IMG/VR virus record: IMGVR_UViG_3300046665_000548
Span: 186,001 to 250,000 of that record
Length of the DNA: 64,000 nucleotides
Direction: 5' to 3' (one strand)
The first letter of the stretch is position 1; each line of letters starts with the position of its first letter. Under the pieces are notes generated by a model that saw only the letters and a list, made by a program, of their open reading frames with translations, was not told the DNA's origin and made no database searches. Positions 14,578 through 61,910 of this stretch are shown here, piece after piece. A program made the translations under genes and the position numbers.

Positions 14578-16074
14578 ATGAGCCGATCAGCCCTGAGGGT
14601 ATTGCCCTCTCACAAACAATTTGTCCTGGCTCCTTCTTCACAAGCTCTCGGGACTAGCTTTTCGATTATGAAGACTCCGCATTCTAACCGCGCAGTGGAC
14701 CTCGCTAGCTCACAAGACGCCCCGTGGTTCGGTGATATCCTCGATGCTATCCCAGTCGCGGTCTGTAGGACCGACGCCAAGGGACGGCTAACCTATCTCA
14801 ACCAAGCTGCTGCTGATTTTGCCGGTATGGAGTCTAAATTAGGCGACACGCTTTGGAATGGTTTGCACAAAATTTACACCATGGCCGGTTTGCCTATTAC
14901 TCTTAAAAATTGCCCGATGGCAGTTTCTTTGAAGGAAGGAAGGGCGATACATGGGGCCGAAGCTCAATGCCAGCGCAAAGATGGCAGCCTGTTTCCTGTT
15001 CTCGTCTATTCAACGCCAATTTTCGACCGGCACGGGAAAGTTACTGGCGCGGTCCATATGCTTGTGGATGTCAGCGAACGTCATGCAACTTCCCGGTTTC
15101 TTACCCTTGCAGAGAAGCGTCTTCAGACAACGTATGATGTCGTGAGCGTTGGTATTGCCGAAACCGATGGGGCGGGACGTTTTTTGAACGCTAACCAGCG
15201 CGTCATAGACAACACCGGCCTTAGCCTAGATCAACTCAAAAACATGACGTTTTTCGATCTCTGTTCTCCCGAGGATCGCAACATCGAGCGTGAAAATTAC
15301 GAAAACCTGATCAAGGGCGACATCCTCAGCTACACTCTGGAAAGAAAGACCGCATTCACCCAAAATCTTTGGTTTCGGGTGACGACCAACGCGGTATGCG
15401 ATGACCACGGTCGGTTTATGTACGCGGTAAGGGTTTCGAGCGACATCACGAAACGCATGAAAGCAGAGGAAAAGCAGAGACTTCTGCTTAACGAATTGAA
15501 CCATCGTGTGAAAAACACTTTGGCGACGATTCAATCCATTGCGTTTCAGACCGCAAGAGCTACCACGGAACCAAAGGAATTCAAAAAAGCTTTCGAAGGA
15601 AGGCTTCTTGGCATCTCGCAAACTCACGATCTCCTCACGTCATCGGGATGGGAGGGGGCAACTCTGGCCGATGTGGTTCGAGCCGAGCTTATGCCATTTC
15701 ACGGCGAAGACACTCTGAGATGGGTCATGAGCGGGCCATCCGTAAATCTGGTTCCGGCATCGGTTGTTTCACTTGGTATGGTGATCCACGAACTAGCCAC
15801 CAACGCGATCAAATACGGCGCGCTGTCTGATGCGGACGGACAGGTGGACGTGACGTGGAATTTTACCAGAAAAGGACCAGAGGGGCGACGGCTGAAGCTT
15901 CGATGGATCGAGTTTGACGGCCCACCGGTCGTCAAGCCAACGCGCCAGGGCTTTGGTTCGAAGTTGTTTCGAAGCCTAGCTCGTCAACTTGATGCCAAGT
16001 TGGATGTCGAGTACGCACCGAGTGGAGTCCGTTGTTTGCTCGACATCCCGGTCGAGTCAATCACTGCGACCTAA
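14578..16074 (+). CDS. PAS-PAS-HWE histidine kinase (start may be downstream)
   Basis: ELNHRVKNTLA H-box, HELATNAIKYGALS N-box, RWIEFDGP (WxE) and GFGS G-box; two PAS/PAC domains. Confidence 0.92.
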   Translation: MSRSALRVLPSHKQFVLAPSSQALGTSFSIMKTPHSNRAVDLASSQDAPWFGDILDAIPVAVCRTDAKGRLTYLNQAAADFAGMESKLGDTLWNGLHKIYTMAGLPITLKNCPMAVSLKEGRAIHGAEAQCQRKDGSLFPVLVYSTPIFDRHGKVTGAVHMLVDVSERHATSRFLTLAEKRLQTTYDVVSVGIAETDGAGRFLNANQRVIDNTGLSLDQLKNMTFFDLCSPEDRNIERENYENLIKGDILSYTLERKTAFTQNLWFRVTTNAVCDDHGRFMYAVRVSSDITKRMKAEEKQRLLLNELNHRVKNTLATIQSIAFQTARATTEPKEFKKAFEGRLLGISQTHDLLTSSGWEGATLADVVRAELMPFHGEDTLRWVMSGPSVNLVPASVVSLGMVIHELATNAIKYGALSDADGQVDVTWNFTRKGPEGRRLKLRWIEFDGPPVVKPTRQGFGSKLFRSLARQLDAKLDVEYAPSGVRCLLDIPVESITAT

Positions 16075-20884: not shown

Positions 20885-22084
20885 TCAATACATGTTGAAG
20901 TTGGCGACTTTTAGTCCATCGCCGTCAATTCGTAAAGCCGCAGATGACAATCGGCCGCCTTTTCCGGAGCCCGTGTCGAGGAAGATCGTGTTACCGCCGT
21001 TGCTGTTGACGACCGTCATTGGCTTGGCTGTTGAACGAATGTCATGGCCAACGATGACAGTCATATCGGCAGGAACATTCTCCGTCCAAGTGTAACGACG
21101 TGCTGGGCGTTCTTCATTATAGTTCGCATCGAATTCTCCAAAGAGCGCCCAGGTTTCTAATTCTTTTGCAGTTGCCGATCCCGTCCAGAAACCTGGATGT
21201 ACCCCAGCGTGAGTGAAAAGAATGTTGCCGATCACTCGCCAATGACTTGACCTACTGACGAGACCTTTGAACCGCCCCTGCCAGCGCTTTCTGGCGGGCA
21301 ATCCCAATGATCCTAGGGCGTCCGTGGTGACCTTGTTGCCGTCGCTCAGTCGAACAGACGTGCGACCTCGCTCAATCTGATTGATCCATCTCATGATCTT
21401 TCGTTCATGATTACCAAGGATCATCTCACCCTGGCCGCGCATAACAACGCGATAGACCTCATCAGCGACTTCCAGCGTGTCGGAGCCGTAATCGATCACA
21501 TCACCCAGGAAGATCATGTAATGGTTTCGAGATCGAGCCCAGTCCAACGCGCTCAACAGAGATTGATACATCCCGTGAACGTCCCCAATGACGGTGATGC
21601 CATTCCAGTTCGCTTTGAGGCTTTCCAGATCGGGCTTTGTTTTGTCTACAAGCGACGGCTGATGAATTCTCCAGTCAATGACCTCGGCCAGTCCGTCGCC
21701 ACGAAGCAAGTCTTTTTCAGCCGCGTAGAAACGCTGCACGGATTGTTCGTCCGCTCCAGCAGGATCACAAAGGAAGTAGAAAACCGGAACACCAATATCG
21801 CTTCCCAATCGCGCGAGAGACATTCGGTCTTCCCGTCGAAGATTAGGAGCGTCAACAACAACGCGTTCGCCAAGATCAAGCTTCACCTGAATGCGGTGCC
21901 TGATCTCAGCGAAAACAATCGAATTGATTTCTGGTTTACTTTTCTCACCTACGAGATTGTAGGTCACATTGGCAGCACTAAGAATCTCGTAATCGGGGAA
22001 ATAACGAGCAAGTGTTTGCTCTCGATTTACTTGAGATGGACTTACCGCAATTACTAAAGAATGAGAAGGAACAACTTTTTGCAT
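20885..22084 (-). CDS. Polynucleotide kinase-phosphatase-like protein: degenerate AAA_33 kinase plus intact calcineurin-like phosphoesterase
   Basis: GDVHG, GDVIDYG, GNHE, THAG, VGHD and LDTG motifs; the P-loop reads VSPSQVNRE. Confidence 0.8.
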   Translation of the reverse strand: MQKVVPSHSLVIAVSPSQVNREQTLARYFPDYEILSAANVTYNLVGEKSKPEINSIVFAEIRHRIQVKLDLGERVVVDAPNLRREDRMSLARLGSDIGVPVFYFLCDPAGADEQSVQRFYAAEKDLLRGDGLAEVIDWRIHQPSLVDKTKPDLESLKANWNGITVIGDVHGMYQSLLSALDWARSRNHYMIFLGDVIDYGSDTLEVADEVYRVVMRGQGEMILGNHERKIMRWINQIERGRTSVRLSDGNKVTTDALGSLGLPARKRWQGRFKGLVSRSSHWRVIGNILFTHAGVHPGFWTGSATAKELETWALFGEFDANYNEERPARRYTWTENVPADMTVIVGHDIRSTAKPMTVVNSNGGNTIFLDTGSGKGGRLSSAALRIDGDGLKVANFNMY

Positions 22085-22313: not shown

Positions 22314-23708
22314 TCATTGCTTCTCCATAACCTCACTCATTGCTTGCATATCGAGCGCCGCAATCGGCGTATCGCCAGAGTACGCAAGCTTTGCGAATAG
22401 TGCGTCATTTGCCGTTGGAACGGCCATTGCTATGCAATAGTTGTCTTTGGCGCGGCGAACCTTGAAACTTACATTCGAGGCAATTTCCTCGAACGCTTTG
22501 ATGTCGTCCGGGCTGAGTTCGCTCTCGTAGCTAATCCGCCATTCTTTATCGATTTTCGCACGAACGACGACCATGCCTTGATATTTGTCGAGTTCGCCGC
22601 GTTTCTCGATATCGTTGAACAGTTTCCGAACCGGAGAGCCGAATTGAACGGTGAGCGCACGAAGTTTCCACGTTCGCTTGTACCATTCCTGGAGATCGAT
22701 GGTCTCAACCTCCTGCTTCGCGAGTTTGTCGAACTTAACCGCTTCCCAGGTTTCGGGTAGGTCCATTGCCTTCGAGTCGCCAGCCCAATCGGGCCGATCC
22801 GTGCCGGGCATGTCTTGATAATATCCGGACCAACCGAGGATTGACTGCTTCACTCGCGCCATATCATCAAAACGCTTGGCCTTCATGAACTTGTCCGTCA
22901 TGGTGAGCTTTACATCGGTACCGTTCCACTCAAGCCACGGCGTAGTTTCCATGAACAGCCCGGTCGAGCGGTCACGCAGAACGTATTGGAACGTGGTCGG
23001 AATATTGACGGCTTCCACAAACGGTCCGAGTTGGTTGAACGGTAGCAGGAAGTTATCCCCGTCAGCCTCGCAGGGCACACAGAGGCCGTCGTACAACATC
23101 CACACGTAACCGTTTCTCATCGCCGCGAGCGGATGAGTGGCGTTCCTAACGCCTGGAATCACGTTCCCACGACTGAACTTGCCGGTGACTTTGATCTCGG
23201 TCCCGGCCGCGAGCTTCACGTAAGGTTGGGCGATGTATTCGAACACCCCTTTGGCCTCAAGGGCAGCTTCGAGGTCCTTCAAAGAGCCCGAGACGCCAGC
23301 CTTTGACCGCTTAGCATCGTGAAACTTTCGATGGGCTTCGCTCCATCGATCATCGTTTTCGTTATACGTGAACGCGACATCTTCGGTAAGACGCCAGATC
23401 GAGCCCTTCACCATCTGCTGTTGCTTAGTGATTGCGCGCTCTTTTTTCGGAGCCGACGCCTTGGCGGGCTCTTCGGCAGGAGTGACGTAGCCGATCAGAG
23501 TCCGCTTTCCGGACCATTCAACGTAGCGAAGATCATTGCCTGGAACTGCGCCGAGACGAGGCAAGTACGCCGAGTGAAGATCATGAATGTATTTGACCTT
23601 CACGACCTGATCACGAGACGCTGGCTTAGGGTCGTCAAACCCATACCCATCGTAAACAGGAGTGCCCTTCGGTACGCGCACGTATCCGCCAACAACGATC
23701 TCCGACAT
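22314..23708 (-). CDS. Hypothetical protein (464 aa)
   Basis: Long ORF with AAAGGA RBS; no motif recognised. Confidence 0.7.
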   Translation of the reverse strand: MSEIVVGGYVRVPKGTPVYDGYGFDDPKPASRDQVVKVKYIHDLHSAYLPRLGAVPGNDLRYVEWSGKRTLIGYVTPAEEPAKASAPKKERAITKQQQMVKGSIWRLTEDVAFTYNENDDRWSEAHRKFHDAKRSKAGVSGSLKDLEAALEAKGVFEYIAQPYVKLAAGTEIKVTGKFSRGNVIPGVRNATHPLAAMRNGYVWMLYDGLCVPCEADGDNFLLPFNQLGPFVEAVNIPTTFQYVLRDRSTGLFMETTPWLEWNGTDVKLTMTDKFMKAKRFDDMARVKQSILGWSGYYQDMPGTDRPDWAGDSKAMDLPETWEAVKFDKLAKQEVETIDLQEWYKRTWKLRALTVQFGSPVRKLFNDIEKRGELDKYQGMVVVRAKIDKEWRISYESELSPDDIKAFEEIASNVSFKVRRAKDNYCIAMAVPTANDALFAKLAYSGDTPIAALDMQAMSEVMEKQ

Positions 23709-26065: not shown

Positions 26066-26953
26066 TCAAGCGTTGCGTTTCATCTGCTTGTATCGACGGT
26101 CGTAAAAATCGAGCTTCTGCTCGTCAAAATTGGCGTTGGACGCCCGCATCTTTCCGCCATCCAGGAATAGCTCTGTCGCCCGAGCACGGTCCATGAAGGT
26201 CGATGCTTTGTCATCGACCCTCGGCCCCCAACCGAGACGGAGCAGAAAATTCAGAATACCGTCCGGATCATAGCCACGATCACGGTAATCGAGCAGGCTA
26301 GCCGCGCCGTCGCGCTTTGCCATTTTCTTGTTGGCCTTGAAGATCAAACCAACGTGCGCAAATTTAGGAATGTCCAGCGGGTTATCCGAGGCGTGGTTCA
26401 GCGCGGAAAAGATCGCAACCTGCTTAGCGGTATTCGCGATATGGTCGGTGCCACGGATGATGAAATTCACCTCCAGGTCCCAATCATCAACGATAGACGC
26501 GAACTGATAGGTGGCCTGTCCTAGCTTATCGCCGCCGCGCACCAGACATAGCCGTCCGTCGATCTCCTCAACCGCTTTGTCGGAAACCTGAATGTCGCCA
26601 GCGATCTCATCGCGCCAAACACGAGGCATGAACGGCTGCCAAGACAGCATGATCGCCCCATTGTCGGCGGTCGTGGCAAAGCCAGCGTCAAGAAGACGCC
26701 TAGCATAGGCGCTGTAAATCGGACCGCGCTCAGACTGGCGCACGAAACGATCCCAGTCCAGCCCAAGCCATTTCAGACCGTCAAAGATCGGCTGCTCGAC
26801 CTCAACCATATTCCTGTCGGCATCGGTATCGTCCATTCGCAAAATGAACTGACCGCCCGAAGCCTTTGCGGCGAGCCAATTGAAATAAGCCGTACGGGCC
26901 GTCCCGATATGCATCATGCCGGTCGGTGATGGTGCAATGCGCGTCTTGTACAT
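26066..26953 (-). CDS. Truncated glutamyl-tRNA synthetase-like protein (catalytic core only)
   Basis: RIAPSPTG, HIGT (HIGH), LRMDDTD, IRGTDH, KMAKRDG (KMSKS-like). It ends at 295 aa with no anticodon-binding domains. Confidence 0.9.
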   Translation of the reverse strand: MYKTRIAPSPTGMMHIGTARTAYFNWLAAKASGGQFILRMDDTDADRNMVEVEQPIFDGLKWLGLDWDRFVRQSERGPIYSAYARRLLDAGFATTADNGAIMLSWQPFMPRVWRDEIAGDIQVSDKAVEEIDGRLCLVRGGDKLGQATYQFASIVDDWDLEVNFIIRGTDHIANTAKQVAIFSALNHASDNPLDIPKFAHVGLIFKANKKMAKRDGAASLLDYRDRGYDPDGILNFLLRLGWGPRVDDKASTFMDRARATELFLDGGKMRASNANFDEQKLDFYDRRYKQMKRNA

Positions 26954-50752: not shown

Positions 50753-51368
50753 TCACGCCCCCATAGCAAGCATTAGTCGATCCACGCCGACCGCCCATCC
50801 TACACCTTCCTGGTAAGTTCCGCCACCAGCAACTTGCTTTTGAGCGCCTAAACTTTCCACGGCGGCTTCGAAACCGTCCTCGACATAGTAGGATAGACCT
50901 CGTTTTACCGAATCGCTCCAAGTATAGGCCATGCCAAGCTTATCCAAGCAAAGTCGCAAAAGTTGTTTTGCTTGATCTGATTCGGCCGAACCAAGCATCT
51001 CGATGCCGAACTGGGTGAATTCGCGGTAGCGGCCCTTCTGGGGGCGCTCGTAGCGGTAGCAGCGCTGCACATAGAAGACGTTGCGGGTCTTCATGCGCTT
51101 GGACCAATCGTCCCGCCACGTCTCCTGAACGAGCCCGGTAACTTCAGGAATCAGGCACACGTTGCGTTCGCCCTTATCCTGGAAACGCCACATCATCTGG
51201 GAATTCTCGGCCCCGACTTTTTCATCAAAGGTGGCGCTCTCCCAAATGCTTGGGACAATAATTTCCTCGAATTCAGCGTCGATGAAGACACTCCCGAAGA
51301 GTATTGACAACCTTATTGTAGAGCCGGGCCTCGTCGCCGGACAAAATTCGTGTTCCTCTTAACATCAT
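50753..51368 (-). CDS. Minimal histidyl-tRNA synthetase-like catalytic core, interrupted by a +1 frameshift near 51299-51293
   Basis: Frame 1: MMLRGTRILSGDEARLYNKVVNTLR (stop at 51273). Frame 2: VFIDAEFEEIIVP (motif 1), YRYERPQKGRYREFTQ (motif 2), RGLSYY, GGG.Y, GWAVGVDRL (motif 3). No insertion or anticodon domain. Confidence 0.8.
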
Positions 51369-58388: not shown

Positions 58389-59310
58389 ACTATAGCGCCG
58401 CGAGCTTCGCCGCGAAGAACGATCTCGGCGCATTTGATGCAAACCGCACCGTGACCTGGGCCACCGCTGCTGTCGATGGTTGTGCCGCATAGACTGCACG
58501 TGATGAGCGCCGCAGTAGCGAACGTCGGCCCGTCTGAATCCGGAATGGTGACGCGCTTCAATTCATAATATTCGAGTGGCATTACTGGCTCCCACAGTGA
58601 CAGCGATCTTTGGTGCAGTACGGCTTATGACCGTTCCCAGCGGGCTCGCTAGGGCTCTTTGGTTCTAGCTTATCAGCGAGCCTTCGGAAAGCGTCTCCTA
58701 TGCTTGTTGAAGACGAGCACGAGCTTGCTGTGTCGCGAAGAGCCTCAATTAGTCTTTTTGTATCCATTTGCTAACCTCTGCCGGAAAATTTCTGTCCGTC
58801 AGATATCACAAACCCACTCGGATCAACATAGACCTCGCCGTCCCGGCATAGGTCGTCATTCACCGTTATTGTTCGCGGTCCACTGACGTAGATTTGGTGA
58901 GCCACGAGAAACGCGTCAATGGCCGTAGCCACCTCGTCGCCCGACAGTTCAATGGTCACTCCAGGGCCGTACTCGGTCTTCCCTAGACCGCGCTTCACCA
59001 CAGGCATGATTGATTCCTAGTAATTGAACGAGCGGTGCTCATTTAACTGCGATTCCCAGTCCATCGAGACCTTATAGACCTCCATGAGCTTCGTCATGTT
59101 CGGGCCGTTGTTCTCGGCCGCGCGCTTGTGAACGTCTTCTCCGGGCATCACGCGCACTGGATAGTCAGACCAATCATAAGTGTCGCAGACCACTAACAGG
59201 TGACTAGCGCCCGTTGTTTTGGCTTCCTGGAGCCATCGTTGAATGTCTTCTCTGGTGGTTGGCATTTGTCCCTCCAAATGAAAAAGGCCGGAGTTTCCCC
59301 CGGCCTCTCT

Positions 59311-60705
59311 TTACTTGTCGCTGGCCTCATGAGCCGCGATGAACTTGATCACGTTCTCGGACCATCCGTCGATGTGAACCCACTTCGGCTTGTAGCCGAT
59401 GCCGTTCTTCTCGGTGGAGATGTTGATCAGGTAGTTGCGCTTCCCGAAGGCGTCCGCCTTGTCAGGCTTGTTCAACGGGTTGGTATCGCAATCCTGCTCG
59501 TCCGTGATAACGATCACACGATCCGCATTCTTCTCGGCCTTCGCAATCTGCTCCATGCACTGCACGAGGAAGATTCCCCCGCCACCCTGGGCGCTTGCAG
59601 CCTTGCGGATCGCATCAACCATCGCCATACCCTGGCGAGCAGGGATCAAACGAGTGTCATGGATGCGACGGCTATCCGAACCAGCCGTGGCGTAAACCAC
59701 CGGCTCTTCCGAAACACCAGACACGAAGGCAGACAAAGCCGCAGCCGTATCGAGACGGGTCAGTTCGGACTTGCGCGAGAGCATCGCGCCCATCGAACCC
59801 GACACGTCAACCACCAGAACAGTCTTGCCCGGCAGCTTCTCGATATCGGCAAGCGCACCCATCAGTGCCTGATCAAGCTCACGCTCGAACTTGGGCGCAT
59901 GACGAGCCGCCGTGATGAAGCGGAACGGGAGTACGCGGCCAGCACCCTTGCGGGCAGTGATCGCTTCCTTGATCAGCTTCGCATCGACCTTCTCCTGCTC
60001 CATCTTGCGGAGGTTCCGCAGAAGAGCGAGATAGCCAAGCTTGCCATCGGTCAGAAGACGCTCGAAAGTGTCCTTCTTGTCCGCACCGGCCGTGAGATTT
60101 GCCTCCCAAGTATCCGGGGTAGCCATCTTGTCAGCGACAAGACGCTCCCACAGGGCGCGCTGATCGACCGACTTCGGCTTCGGATGCACGAGGAAATACA
60201 CGTCGCGAAGCGTGATCGCGTTGTCGCGATTGTACTTGGCAAGCTGGTACTCATCGAACTTGAGGAACGCCTTGCGGAGGCCCTTACGCATCGCGTGAGA
60301 CATGACCTTCTTGAGCTTGTCCACACCAACGCCACGCTGCTTCGCATGGATCGCCAGCAATTCGGCAAGCTCGTCGGCACGCGTCACGACATTCGCAATC
60401 GTATCTGCGACGATTGCTCCCTTGTGCTGGGTCGCGAGGATCGAGCACAGGAGAAGCGAGACGTGTCGGAGGTTCTGCTCGTGGCGAGCCTCGATAGCGA
60501 TCTCGGCCAGGGTCTCCGGCTTCACACCATTCGCAAGCTCTACAATGCGGTCGTAGACGGACTTGCCGTCCACATAGAACGCATCCTCCCACAGGAGACA
60601 GGTCATGACGGTGCGACGCAGATTCCCCTCAACAGTCGTCTTGACCGCTTGAGCACCACCAGCCGTGAAAATCGGAGACGGCTTCTTCGCAACATTTGTT
60701 CGCAT
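59311..60705 (-). CDS. Ro60/Rsr-like TROVE plus vWA RNA-binding protein
   Basis: EARHEQNLR, RADELAE, AKYNR...LRDV.FLVHPKP, TWE, LGYLALLRNLR, VLPFRF, VDVSGSM (MIDAS), VITDEQ; GGAGGT RBS. Confidence 0.9.
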   Translation of the reverse strand: MRTNVAKKPSPIFTAGGAQAVKTTVEGNLRRTVMTCLLWEDAFYVDGKSVYDRIVELANGVKPETLAEIAIEARHEQNLRHVSLLLCSILATQHKGAIVADTIANVVTRADELAELLAIHAKQRGVGVDKLKKVMSHAMRKGLRKAFLKFDEYQLAKYNRDNAITLRDVYFLVHPKPKSVDQRALWERLVADKMATPDTWEANLTAGADKKDTFERLLTDGKLGYLALLRNLRKMEQEKVDAKLIKEAITARKGAGRVLPFRFITAARHAPKFERELDQALMGALADIEKLPGKTVLVVDVSGSMGAMLSRKSELTRLDTAAALSAFVSGVSEEPVVYATAGSDSRRIHDTRLIPARQGMAMVDAIRKAASAQGGGGIFLVQCMEQIAKAEKNADRVIVITDEQDCDTNPLNKPDKADAFGKRNYLINISTEKNGIGYKPKWVHIDGWSENVIKFIAAHEASDK

Positions 60706-60725
60706 GACATATACCTCCATCAGAT

Positions 60726-60752
60726 GCAAAAGCGGCCCCCTTGGACCGCTTT
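60726..60752 (-). terminator. Intrinsic terminator between the Y RNAs and the Ro60 RBS
   Basis: AAAGCGGTCC-AAGG-GGGCCGCTTT-T. Confidence 0.75.
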
Positions 60753-60763
60753 AGTAGAACTGG

Positions 60764-60894
60764 TAGAAAACGGAATTAGCCGAACCGGGTAACACCCCAC
60801 CCTAGAGTGAGGCTGTTGGCTTCGACGCCAACTCTGTCGGGGTTAAAACCCTAACATTCATCCTAAGTAACCCTGCTCTACGTCACGTTTTCTA
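60764..60894 (-). ncRNA. Y-RNA-like RNA A (long, degenerate tRNA-like module)
   Basis: Conserved core TGACGTA-GAGCAGGGT-TACTT...ACCCGGTTC-GGCTAATTC closed by TAGAAAACG/CGTTTTCTA. Confidence 0.8.
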
Positions 60895-60896
60895 GT

Positions 60897-60982
60897 GTAT
60901 TCGGAATTAGGCGGGAACGGTTATGGCCAGAGGCCATTCGTTATTTGACAAGCGAAGTAACCGCGCCCTACGTCACGAACAC
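60897..60982 (-). ncRNA. Y-RNA-like RNA B (short)
   Basis: Same core with a covarying stem GGGCGCGGT/ACCGTTCCC; promoter ATTGAC-N18-CTATAA at 60990-61019. Confidence 0.8.
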
Positions 60983-61035
60983 AATACACTTATAGCTGGA
61001 ACAATCCCGCCGCGTCAATACCAAATTACGAAAAA

Positions 61036-61305
61036 TTAAGCAACGATCTCGCCGCAATCCGAAGGATCGAGCGGGTTGATCATGACTGGATAATGCTTGG
61101 GCGACTGGGCGGCACGGACACACGGGGTCAGCCTGCCATTGGTGCTGCACCAGCCGGTATCGATCACGACCATATCTTCGATTGGATTGTCCTTGTTGCC
61201 GAACGGATGCTTGGAGAAATCCACCTTGATGCGCTGGCCGGGAGAGTAGGCGGTAACCGAACTGTGAAGCGGGTTCTTCTTCGACGCCTTTTGAAACCGG
61301 ACCAT
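61036..61305 (-). CDS. Hypothetical protein between the Y-RNA cassettes
   Basis: AAGGGAG RBS before MVRFQKASKK. Confidence 0.5.
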   Translation of the reverse strand: MVRFQKASKKNPLHSSVTAYSPGQRIKVDFSKHPFGNKDNPIEDMVVIDTGWCSTNGRLTPCVRAAQSPKHYPVMINPLDPSDCGEIVA

Positions 61306-61357
61306 GCAAATCTCCCTTGCTGACAACGATCTCAATCTACCACAAATTGATGATCTG

Positions 61358-61597
61358 TCAAGCACGTTTACCGAGGAAAACACGCGCGAAACGCGCGGCA
61401 TGGCGAATCAAAAGAGCAGGTTGATACCGGAACGTCGGTCCGCTCCTATTCTTGATGATCAAACGACCATTCGGATTGATCGCGTAGTCTGCGTGTTGCA
61501 ATGCAATTGGACGCTGCTTGTCATCGAGCGCTTGTGCAATAACCTCTTGGACGAACAGGATATTGCCGGATTTGTCATAGCAACGACGATACAACAT
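61358..61597 (-). CDS. Hypothetical protein between the Y-RNA cassettes
   Basis: AGGAG RBS. Confidence 0.55.
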   Translation of the reverse strand: MLYRRCYDKSGNILFVQEVIAQALDDKQRPIALQHADYAINPNGRLIIKNRSGPTFRYQPALLIRHAARFARVFLGKRA

Positions 61598-61611
61598 CGA
61601 AATCTCCTAAT

Positions 61612-61643
61612 GAAAAAGGCGGCCCCTCTTGCGAAGAACCGCC
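61612..61643 (-). terminator. Intrinsic terminator after Y RNA C
   Basis: GGCGG-TTCTT-CGC-AAGAG-GGG-CCGCC followed by TTTTT. Confidence 0.8.
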
Positions 61644-61661
61644 CTAATCAGGGTGCTTAAG

Positions 61662-61800
61662 TGGAAGACGGAATTAGGCGAACCGGGTCAGCTAGCGCTC
61701 TACCGCTGAGCTACCTAAACCTTGCGGCCTAGGGTTGGATTCGAACCAACGACCTCTCGTTTATCATACGAAGTAACCCTGCTCTACGTCACGTCTTCCA
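61662..61800 (-). ncRNA. YrlA-type Y RNA C (circularly permuted tRNA mimic)
   Basis: Order: T arm GTTGG-TTCGAAT-CCAAC, closed acceptor-like hairpin CCTAGGCC-GCAA-GGTTTAGG, D arm TAGCTCAGCGGTAGAGC, inside the shared core and TGGAAGACG/CGTCTTCCA. Confidence 0.88.
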
Positions 61801-61802
61801 TT

Positions 61803-61874
61803 GTACCGAGAATTAGGCTCGGACGGTCTTTTTAGCATTCAAAGCGAAGTAACCGCTCGATACGTCATCGGTAC
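61803..61874 (-). ncRNA. Y-RNA-like RNA D (minimal, 72 nt)
   Basis: GTACCGA/TCGGTAC closing stem, TCGAGCGGT/ACCGTCCGA inner stem, same conserved loops. Confidence 0.8.
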
Positions 61875-61881
61875 CGCGTCG

Positions 61882-61910
61882 ATATAGTCGAAGCACGCGA
61901 GACCGTCAAG
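61882..61910 (-). promoter_or_regulatory. Rhizobial-type sigma70 promoter CTTGAC-N17-CTATAT
   Basis: Exact match to the Sinorhizobium RpoD consensus; predicted TSS coincides with the 5' end of RNA D. Confidence 0.8.

What the first reader, a model, noticed from the sequence alone, without database searches (positions are those of the whole stretch)
59311..61910. Phage Ro60 with four covarying Y-like RNAs in two duplicated promoter-short-long-terminator cassettes
Seen: four elements (61803-61874, 61662-61800, 60897-60982, 60764-60894) share TGACGTA-[9-nt stem]-TACTT...[stem]-G(C/G)CTAATTC. The stems differ in sequence but keep pairing (TCGAGCGGT/ACCGTCCGA, GAGCAGGGT/ACCCGGTTC, GGGCGCGGT/ACCGTTCCC), and all four outer helices differ. 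They form two cassettes, each with a sigma70 promoter, a short RNA, a long RNA and a terminator, just upstream of a TROVE/vWA gene. RNA C is a circularly permuted tRNA mimic (T arm, closed acceptor hairpin, D arm); A has a degenerate module; B and D are minimal. Established: bacterial Ro60 (Rsr) binds Y RNAs, YrlA RNAs mimic tRNA, and such loci are linked to RNA decay and repair after tRNA damage. Inference: a panel of interchangeable tethers or decoys that retarget Ro60 or soak up host tRNA-attacking enzymes. Four Y RNAs of three architectures in one phage looks unusual.
Basis: partly seen in the sequence, partly recalled or inferred. Interest (0 to 1): 0.85.

Follow-up and report, generated by a model that had tools for sequence, protein, structure and literature searches.

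The report
Phage Ro60 gene with four Y RNAs
A giant uncultured phage carries a Ro60 RNA-binding protein gene preceded by four small partner "Y RNAs"; they are real and conserved, but they are an ordinary example of an arrangement already known in bacteria and phages.

Summary
Four minus-strand elements (B 61802-61875, C 61663-61799, D 60896-60983, A 60765-60893) share one module: closing helix, bulged U, 2 bp, internal loop with CGUA, 9-bp stem, then UACUU. They form two paralogous short+long units upstream of a TROVE/vWA (Ro60) gene.

A covariance model of this module hits exactly these four in 64 kb (39-67 bits). It finds nothing above 21 bits in 910 kb of control contigs. Across 61 related elements 89% of cells pair and all 19 pairs show compensatory changes.

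RNA C has the YrlA tRNA-like domain (T arm, closed acceptor hairpin, D arm). A is a decayed paralogue. B and D are minimal, like YrlB.

The claim that four Y RNAs are unusual fails. Related phage Ro60 loci hold 2-8 such elements (CcrColossus 8, Tenjo 5), and bacterial relatives hold up to 6.

Phage Ro60 with upstream Y RNAs is published (Chen 2014; Thermus phage phiLo, Hu 2025). The motif here is a CGUA variant of the published CGAA Ro60 site.

The decoy or retargeting function is untested, and no RNA-seq run was found.

Verdict: a new member of a known kind, of modest interest.

The parts
59311..60705 (-). Ro60 orthologue (TROVE HEAT-repeat ring + vWA with MIDAS DVSGS). The likely start is ATG 60705, 8 nt after GGAGG; the mechanical ORF starts at TTG 60729.
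   Evidence: Pfam TROVE 1.3e-17, vWA_Ro60 sub-threshold. phrog_850 RNA-binding protein 1.8e-45. Full-length match to Thermus phage phiLo Ro60 structures 9KOP/9L5Y, E 5e-19, DxSxS conserved. 49% identity to the CcrColossus TROVE protein.
60729..60752 (-). Hairpin after cassette 2, 24 nt before the Ro60 start codon. A weak intrinsic terminator or processing hairpin; Ro60 is probably expressed by read-through (inferred).
   Evidence: Fold -19.1 kcal/mol, z -2.5. Aligns with the cassette 1 terminator. Not called by the terminator scan.
60765..60893 (-). Y RNA A (long, 129 nt). Docking module intact. Apical part has a V-like hairpin, a T-arm-like hairpin with altered loop and an 8-bp hairpin, but no D arm.
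   Evidence: R1 38.9 bits, E 2e-8. Fold z -3.3. Docking module 53/60 identical to C, apical part 44/77.
60896..60983 (-). Y RNA D (short, 88 nt), YrlB-like minimal form.
   Evidence: R1 66.8 bits, E 2e-16. Fold z -3.0.
60989..61018 (-). Promoter-like site of cassette 2: TTGACG, 18 nt, TATAAG.
   Evidence: Read. Conserved with cassette 1 and L006. Not called by the generic scan.
61036..61305 (-). Small ORF (89 aa) between the cassettes, with its own TTGACA-16-TAGATT promoter. Not shown to belong to the system.
   Evidence: No Pfam or PHROG match. Absent from related loci.
61358..61597 (-). Small ORF (79 aa) directly behind the cassette 1 terminator. Not shown to belong to the system.
   Evidence: No family match. 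Absent from related loci.
61616..61645 (-). Intrinsic terminator of cassette 1.
   Evidence: Terminator scan: 13 pairs plus T run. Fold -25.9 kcal/mol, z -4.5.
61663..61799 (-). Y RNA C (long, 137 nt), YrlA-type. Docking module, anticodon-arm-like V hairpin (uucgu-AUGAUAA-acgag), T arm, 8-bp closed acceptor-like hairpin, D arm.
   Evidence: R1 46.1 bits. Rfam YrlA 30.7 bits, E 3e-4, model positions 24-84. Alignment fold of 14 homologues: 23 of 31 pairs with compensatory changes. Fold z -3.8.
61802..61875 (-). Y RNA B (short, 74 nt), YrlB-like minimal form.
   Evidence: R1 66.0 bits, E 3e-16. Fold.
61881..61909 (-). Promoter-like site of cassette 1: TTGACG, 17 nt, TATATC.
   Evidence: Not called by the generic scan.

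Best explanation
This is a phage-borne Ro60 / Y RNA ribonucleoprotein module of the known bacterial and phage type. A roughly 464-aa Ro60 orthologue is preceded on the same strand by two paralogous transcription units. Each unit makes a short and a long Y RNA only 2 nt apart, so probably as one precursor that is then trimmed. All four RNAs carry the same docking module: closing helix, bulged U, two base pairs (GA:UC here, GG:CC in most relatives), an internal loop whose 5' side reads CGUA, a 9-bp stem with one mismatch, then UACUU(C). The 5' strand G-A-C-G-U-A-G is a one-base variant of the published Ro60-recognition motif GNCGAAN0-1G, also called the 'CGAA bulge'. Relatives carry GGCGAAG, GGCGUAG or GGCGCAG at the same place. 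Inferred: this module docks each RNA on the outer face of the Ro60 ring. Inferred by analogy only: the variable apical part selects what the ring is coupled to. RNA C would present a tRNA-shaped domain to tRNA-recognising proteins. The minimal B and D would present a single-stranded pyrimidine-rich loop, as YrlB-type RNAs do. The most likely partner is the host exoribonuclease PNPase, as in D. radiodurans RYPER and Thermus phage phiLo. RNA A is a decaying or re-purposed paralogue of C. Ro60 itself and the 79-aa ORF sit directly behind the two terminator hairpins without promoters of their own, so they are probably expressed by read-through. My confidence that these are Ro60-partner Y RNAs is about 0.8. 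My confidence that the effector is PNPase or RNA decay control is about 0.35.
For: The motif and CM hits are specific to the locus. Covariation is strong: on 17 short elements 89.4% of cells pair against 64.5% in shuffles and about 50% when slid, with 17 of 19 pairs changed on both sides. On 61 elements the figures are 89.3% against 60.1%, with 19 of 19 pairs. Every hit lies on the TROVE strand next to a TROVE gene, in 16 phage sources and 22 bacterial loci. Unpaired positions are invariant: U9, G13, U31, C33 and the 3' U. RNA C matches Rfam YrlA and the alignment fold. The protein aligns over its full length with phiLo Ro60, with the MIDAS motif conserved. [quoted passage not shown] The docking module is better conserved between paralogues than the apical parts: 88% against 57% for C/A, and 80% against 36% for B/D.
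Against: There is no evidence of transcription, processing or Ro60 binding for this phage, because no RNA run was listed. No element reaches the Rfam YrlA gathering score (30.7 against 69). The central base of the binding motif differs from the published one (U for A). The promoters lack the canonical final T of the -10 box and were not called by the scan. The elements used for covariation were chosen partly by their ability to pair, which inflates the paired fraction. The conserved unpaired motifs, the strand and neighbour bias and the negative control were not part of that selection. The PNPase step rests wholly on analogy.
Confidence: 0.75

Rival explanations
1. The elements act mainly in cis. 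They would be structured leaders of the mRNAs behind them (Ro60 and the 79-aa ORF) that Ro60 binds to autoregulate read-through or stability, rather than free-standing Y RNAs.
For: Both cassettes end in a hairpin directly in front of a coding sequence that has no promoter of its own. The second hairpin is weak. In M. smegmatis the Y RNAs are cut from a precursor encoded upstream of rsr (PMC4201824).
Against: In L008 and L009 the same elements lie downstream of the TROVE gene. Arrays of up to 8 are far more than a leader needs. Closed terminal helices abutting each other 2-7 nt apart look like a processed array. Homologous RNAs in Salmonella, M. smegmatis and phiLo are stable Ro60-bound species.
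Confidence: 0.1
2. The RNAs are Ro60-independent tRNA decoys. The tRNA-shaped RNA C, and to a lesser degree A, would soak up host tRNA-cleaving or tRNA-modifying defence enzymes. Linkage to Ro60 would be historical.
For: C has T arm, D arm and acceptor-like stem plus a V hairpin with anticodon-arm geometry. The phage invests heavily in tRNA biology: 12 tRNAs, aaRS-like genes and a kinase/phosphoesterase.
Against: Two of the four RNAs have no tRNA-like part at all, yet they keep the docking module under covariation. The docking module is the best-conserved part. Linkage to TROVE is seen at every locus where the model hits; one TROVE locus (L004) has no hit.
Confidence: 0.07
3. The elements are non-functional debris: decayed tandem tRNA genes and a recent segmental duplication.
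For: The 5' two-thirds of C resembles a tRNA (Rfam tRNA 20.7 bits, E 0.31). A is visibly degenerating relative to C.
Against: Compensatory changes occur at 19 of 19 pairs across 61 elements. Unpaired motifs are invariant. The elements are conserved across phages and bacteria whose TROVE proteins share only 43-50% identity.
Confidence: 0.03

Closest known systems
YrlA / YrlB Y RNAs with Rsr (Ro60) in Salmonella Typhimurium and Mycobacterium smegmatis (Chen et al. 2014, PMC4201824; Rfam RF02553)
   Same: The RNAs are encoded next to Ro60 on the same strand. They share a 5' GNCG-A-G motif, a conserved YUAY after the stem, and the order V, T, closed acceptor-like stem, D arm. One tRNA-like RNA is paired with one minimal hairpin RNA, made from a common precursor.
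   Different: The motif reads GACGUAG rather than GNCGAA(N)G. Both strands of the closing helix and the 3' loop (GCCUAAUUC) are conserved here. The short+long pair is duplicated. There is no RtcR/RtcB operon context. Scores are below the Rfam gathering threshold.
Thermus phage phiLo Ro60 with Yrl1 and Yrl2 (Hu et al. 2025, PMC12135203; PDB 9KOP, 9L5Y)
   Same: It is a phage-encoded Ro60 with Y-like RNAs immediately upstream. The RNAs have stem / bulge with CGAA-type motif / stem architecture. It is the best solved-structure match of the window protein (E 5e-19, full length).
   Different: phiLo has two RNAs against four here, and no tRNA-like domain is reported for phiLo Yrls. Protein identity is low. 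PNPase binding was shown there and is not tested here.
Caulobacter phage CcrColossus TROVE locus (JX100810; listed among phages with Y-like RNAs)
   Same: It is one of the closest cultured-phage relatives of the protein (49%). It carries the same docking module upstream on the same strand, with a mixture of minimal, T-arm-only and full tRNA-like elements.
   Different: It has eight contiguous elements and no intervening ORFs. Its motif is GGCGUAG with GG:CC pairs and a 3' UGUUCCCC. One element is annotated there as tRNA-Gln.
Deinococcus radiodurans Rsr / Yrn1 / PNPase (RYPER)
   Same: Functional model: a Y RNA docks on Ro60 by its stem and tethers an exoribonuclease by its apical module.
   Different: Yrn1 belongs to a separate Y RNA lineage with a different arm order. 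No PNPase link is shown here.

Membership tests
Ro60 / Rsr protein | TROVE (HEAT-repeat ring) domain | tested here: met
   Pfam PF05731 at 64.6 bits against a cut-off of 23. phrog_850. Full-length alignment to phiLo Ro60.
Ro60 / Rsr protein | C-terminal vWA domain with MIDAS DxSxS | tested here: met
   VDVSGSM aligns with the phiLo MIDAS motif. Pfam vWA_Ro60 scores 21.9 bits, below its cut-off of 27.7, so this is met by motif and alignment, not by the curated score.
Ro60 / Rsr protein | Ring with central cavity that binds Y RNA on its outer surface | not tested
   No structure was predicted. This is inferred from homology to 9KOP/9L5Y.
Bacterial/phage Y RNA (YrlA type, Rfam RF02553) | Encoded within 4 kb of the Ro60 gene on the same strand | tested here: met
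   All four elements lie 60-1170 nt upstream of the Ro60 start on the minus strand.
Bacterial/phage Y RNA (YrlA type, Rfam RF02553) | 5' GNCGAAN0-1G motif (putative Ro60 site) | tested here: inconclusive
   The window has GACGUAG (three copies) and GACGUAU (one): one base off (U for A). Across 61 homologous elements this position is U in 34, C in 14 and A in 13, while G, C/U, G and A are kept. It is therefore a variant of the same motif, but binding is untested.
Bacterial/phage Y RNA (YrlA type, Rfam RF02553) | tRNA-like domain: T arm, acceptor-like stem-loop, D arm | tested here: met
   Met for RNA C only. A has a T-like hairpin without a D arm. B and D have none.
Bacterial/phage Y RNA (YrlA type, Rfam RF02553) | Score at or above the Rfam gathering threshold (69 bits) | tested here: not met
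   Nothing at gathering threshold. C gives 30.7 bits as a local match, E 3e-4. Relatives reach 30-56 bits.
Bacterial/phage Y RNA (YrlA type, Rfam RF02553) | Stable RNA bound by Ro60 in vivo; tRNA-type modifications | not testable with these tools
   No RNA-seq run was listed.
YrlB-like minimal Y RNA | [quoted passage not shown] | tested here: inconclusive
   B and D have the docking module and lie 2 nt from a long RNA. Their apical loops are 24-38 nt and start with UACUUCGCUU, so they are larger than a 'small' loop.

The most novel reading that the evidence does not exclude
Ro60 loci of this clade, in phages and in soil bacteria alike, may encode polycistronic arrays of 2-8 Y RNAs that share one docking module but carry deliberately diversified heads. 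The heads include a class I-like tRNA mimic with an anticodon-arm-shaped V hairpin, T-arm-only forms and bare loops. The array would then be a combinatorial adaptor panel that lets a single Ro60 ring be pointed at several different partners or substrates during infection. The window's duplicated short+long cassette would be one step in the birth-and-divergence process that builds such panels.
Probability: 0.2. Interest if true: 0.6.

Novelty: new member of a known kind. Interest (0 to 1): 0.3.

Why it matters
It adds a clean, covariation-supported example of a phage Ro60 / Y RNA module from a roughly 600-kb phage. It also shows that Rfam's YrlA model misses this clade at its curated threshold, so these RNAs go unannotated or are mislabelled as tRNAs. 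The side result may have more value than the finding itself: a simple model of the docking module recovers arrays of up to 8 Y RNAs beside Ro60 genes in many phages and bacteria. That gives a ready-made comparative data set for asking what the variable heads do. It does not open a new kind of system.

Tried and rejected
- Megablast of the locus against 50,697 phage records found no match, so relatives had to be found through the protein.
- A degenerate DNA pattern scan of IMG/VR returned 120 or more stretches, but only 6 of the loci it added encode a TROVE protein. The rest are chance matches, and they served as a negative control.
- Rfam at gathering threshold returned only tRNAs.
- I considered that the conserved GUAG and UUAC pair to form a D-arm-like hairpin, as the Rfam tRNA model aligned them. 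I rejected this because relatives with GAAG or GCAG keep UUAC or AUAC without compensation, and the 9-bp stem to the 3' strand covaries instead.
- My first pairing-based finder gave false positives of more than 200 nt in unrelated DNA, so I replaced it with the covariance model.
- An alphaproteobacterial-type promoter pattern matched only cassette 1 in the window, so the pattern says little about the promoter class.
- The two ORFs between the cassettes have no family match and no counterpart in related loci.
- Sequencing-run searches gave only 5-7% word shares in DNA runs and no RNA run.
- Chen 2014's supplementary tables and the 2020 Annual Review were not held. I therefore cannot say whether array sizes per phage have been tabulated in print.
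Full report
**What is there.**

On the minus strand, reading 5' to 3', the locus contains:
- a promoter-like site (TTGACG, 17 nt, TATATC; 61909-61881);
- short RNA B (61875-61802), then 2 nt, then long RNA C (61799-61663);
- a strong intrinsic terminator (61645-61616);
- a 79-aa ORF (61597-61358);
- an 89-aa ORF with its own TTGACA/TAGATT promoter (61305-61036);
- a second promoter-like site (TTGACG, 18 nt, TATAAG; 61018-60989);
- short RNA D (60983-60896), then 2 nt, then long RNA A (60893-60765);
- a weaker hairpin (60752-60729);
- 24 nt later, behind a GGAGG, the ATG (60705) of a TROVE/vWA protein that runs to 59311.

The window is part of IMGVR_UViG_3300046665_000548, a 607,744-bp viral contig. 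The window also encodes a tail fibre, 12 tRNAs and aminoacyl-tRNA-synthetase-like proteins. No near-identical phage record exists.

Yes. TGACGTA-N9-TACTT occurs four times against 0.08 expected, and only here. Four of the five GSCTAATTC sites in the window are the 3' partners.

All four RNAs fold the same way. An 8-bp closing helix is followed by a bulged U and two more pairs (GA with UC). Next comes an internal loop (CGUA opposite GCCUAAU), then a 9-bp stem with one mismatch, then UACUU.

Between paralogues the helices differ by compensatory changes. The docking module is more conserved than the apical part: C/A 53 of 60 against 44 of 77, and B/D 48 of 60 against 10 of 28.

The two cassettes align with each other, and with the single cassette of the closest relative (L006, TROVE 68% identical), from promoter to terminator.

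**Relatives and statistics.**

The TROVE protein has 43-50% identical homologues in several groups:
- the Caulobacter and Brevundimonas jumbo phages, and the Xanthomonas phages of the Tenjo group;
- several IMG/VR contigs;
- soil Acidobacteriota MAGs.

Reading the intergenic DNA beside those genes showed the same module repeated many times.

I aligned 17 short elements (A2) and counted pairs for the structure read from the window:
- 89.4% of cells pair, against 64.5% in shuffles and 43-53% when the partner is slid.
- 17 of 19 pairs change on both sides.

A covariance model of that alignment (R1) gave these results:
- 63 hits in 17 sources, every one on the TROVE strand.
- Exactly four in the window, at 38.9-66.8 bits.
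- 88 hits in 22 bacterial loci, all upstream of the TROVE gene on its strand.
- Nothing better than 20.6 bits (E 0.02) in 910 kb of viral contigs that match the 5' sequence pattern but lack a TROVE gene.

On the 61-element model alignment all 19 pairs show double changes. The GA:UC pairs of the window and L006 are themselves a compensated version of the GG:CC of the other 55.

One caveat applies. Both my first finder and the model select for pairing, so the paired fractions are inflated. The invariant unpaired bases, the strand and neighbour bias and the negative control are independent of that selection.

**What the four RNAs are.**

The family consensus is U-G-(G/A)-(C/U)-G-N-A-G, then the stem, then U-A-C-U-U-C, with ...G-N-N-U-R-U-U-C-C on the 3' side.

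Chen et al. 2014 described a 5' GNCGAAN0-1G as the likely Ro60 site of YrlA and YrlB. They also described a conserved YUAY that begins the V loop, followed by V, T, acceptor-like and D stem-loops. Hu et al. 2025 showed that the CGAA in the bulge of two upstream Yrl RNAs is needed for binding to the Ro60 of Thermus phage phiLo.

The window's GACGUAG / UUAC is that design with one base changed. Relatives carry GGCGAAG at the same place.

RNA C matches Rfam YrlA over the tRNA-like domain (30.7 bits, E 3e-4). An alignment fold of 14 homologues recovers the closing helix, docking stem, T arm, acceptor-like hairpin and D arm, with compensatory changes in 23 of 31 pairs.

RNA A keeps C's docking stem and T stem but has an altered T loop and no D arm. 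It is therefore a diverged paralogue.

B and D have only a loop beyond the docking stem, like the minimal second Y RNA reported in each studied bacterium.

The protein aligns over its full length with the phiLo Ro60 structures, and the MIDAS motif is conserved.

**How it most likely works.**

Shown:
- A Ro60 orthologue and four RNAs that share a covarying docking module.
- One of the RNAs is a YrlA-type tRNA mimic.

Inferred from the published systems:
- The module docks each RNA on Ro60.
- The apical part couples the ring to a partner, most plausibly host PNPase, or gates access to the cavity.

Inferred from anatomy:
- Each cassette is transcribed as a dimeric precursor.
- Ro60 and the 79-aa ORF are expressed by read-through of the cassette hairpins.

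Rivals (a cis-acting leader, Ro60-independent tRNA decoys, tRNA debris) are weighed in their own sections. The downstream position of the elements in L008 and L009, the conservation of tRNA-less members and the covariation argue against them.

**Comparison and novelty.**

Phage Ro60 with adjacent Y RNAs is established (22 phages in Chen 2014, including CcrColossus; phiLo in 2025).

R1 finds the following counts:
- 8 in CcrColossus;
- 5 in Tenjo, L007 and L075;
- 4 in L011, L017, L022, L079 and L091 (a fifth in L091 comes only from my pairing script).

Bacterial loci hold up to 6. These arrays mix minimal, T-arm-only and full tRNA-like members.

The particular features here are minor: the CGUA/GA:UC variant shared with L006, and a duplication of the short+long unit with two unrelated small ORFs in between.

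I file it as a new member of a known kind. It fails the Rfam gathering score, which reflects the model's reach rather than the biology.

**Limits.**

- No transcript evidence could be obtained.
- The supplementary tables of Chen 2014 and the 2020 review were not available, so I cannot say whether the size of such arrays has already been tabulated.
- The host is unknown. The promoter shape, an HWE histidine kinase and the nearest phage relatives hint at an alphaproteobacterium. This rests partly on my own knowledge of those families.

Noticed in passing
L001 2715-3912; L003 3361-3960; L133, L140, L151 (upstream 2.5 kb): Arrays of Y-like RNAs are the rule beside TROVE genes of this clade. Caulobacter phage CcrColossus has 8 contiguous elements, Xanthomonas phage Tenjo has 5, and Acidobacteriota MAGs have up to 6. 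All lie on the TROVE strand, often only 3-7 nt apart, like tRNA arrays.
   Followed up: partly
L001 3128-3195 (JX100810 109217-109284): The GenBank 'tRNA-Gln' of CcrColossus lies inside a 169-nt Y-like element (L001 3122-3290). It is probably the 5' part of a Y RNA, not a tRNA gene.
   Followed up: no
window 61753-61769 (-); L001 3475-3491; L003 3845-3861; L079, L008, L009, L022: The V hairpin of YrlA-type elements has anticodon-arm geometry in 10 of 26 long elements: a 5-bp stem, a 7-nt loop with U at position 2 and A at positions 6-7, then a 5-nt AGGUC before the T arm. The loop is AUGAUAA in the window. CUGUUAA recurs in four different loci. This suggests descent from tandem tRNAs, or a function for the loop.
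   Followed up: partly
window 20885-22084 (-) and 22314-23708 (-): A kinase (AAA_33) plus metallophosphoesterase protein, resembling polynucleotide kinase-phosphatase RNA-repair enzymes, sits next to an unassigned 464-aa ORF. This may be an RNA end-healing and sealing pair.
   Followed up: no
window 26066-26953 (-), 50753-51310 (-), and 12 tRNA genes (33040-62317): The window encodes a GluRS/GlnRS catalytic-domain protein, a HisRS-like fragment and 12 tRNAs, including a tRNA-Ser 350 nt upstream of cassette 1. The phage invests heavily in translation and tRNA functions.
   Followed up: no
window 14578-16074 (+): A PAS-PAS-HWE histidine kinase is encoded in a phage genome. The family is typical of alphaproteobacteria (own knowledge), which gives a hint to the host.
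   Followed up: no
L002 7779-8034: Brevundimonas phage Kabachok carries a permuted tmRNA (Rfam tmRNA_permuted, 57 bits) about 2.4 kb downstream of its TROVE gene.
   Followed up: no
window 59200-60792 (+): A 530-aa ORF lies antisense to the Ro60 gene. It is most likely a by-product of G+C-rich coding sequence on the other strand, not a gene.
   Followed up: no
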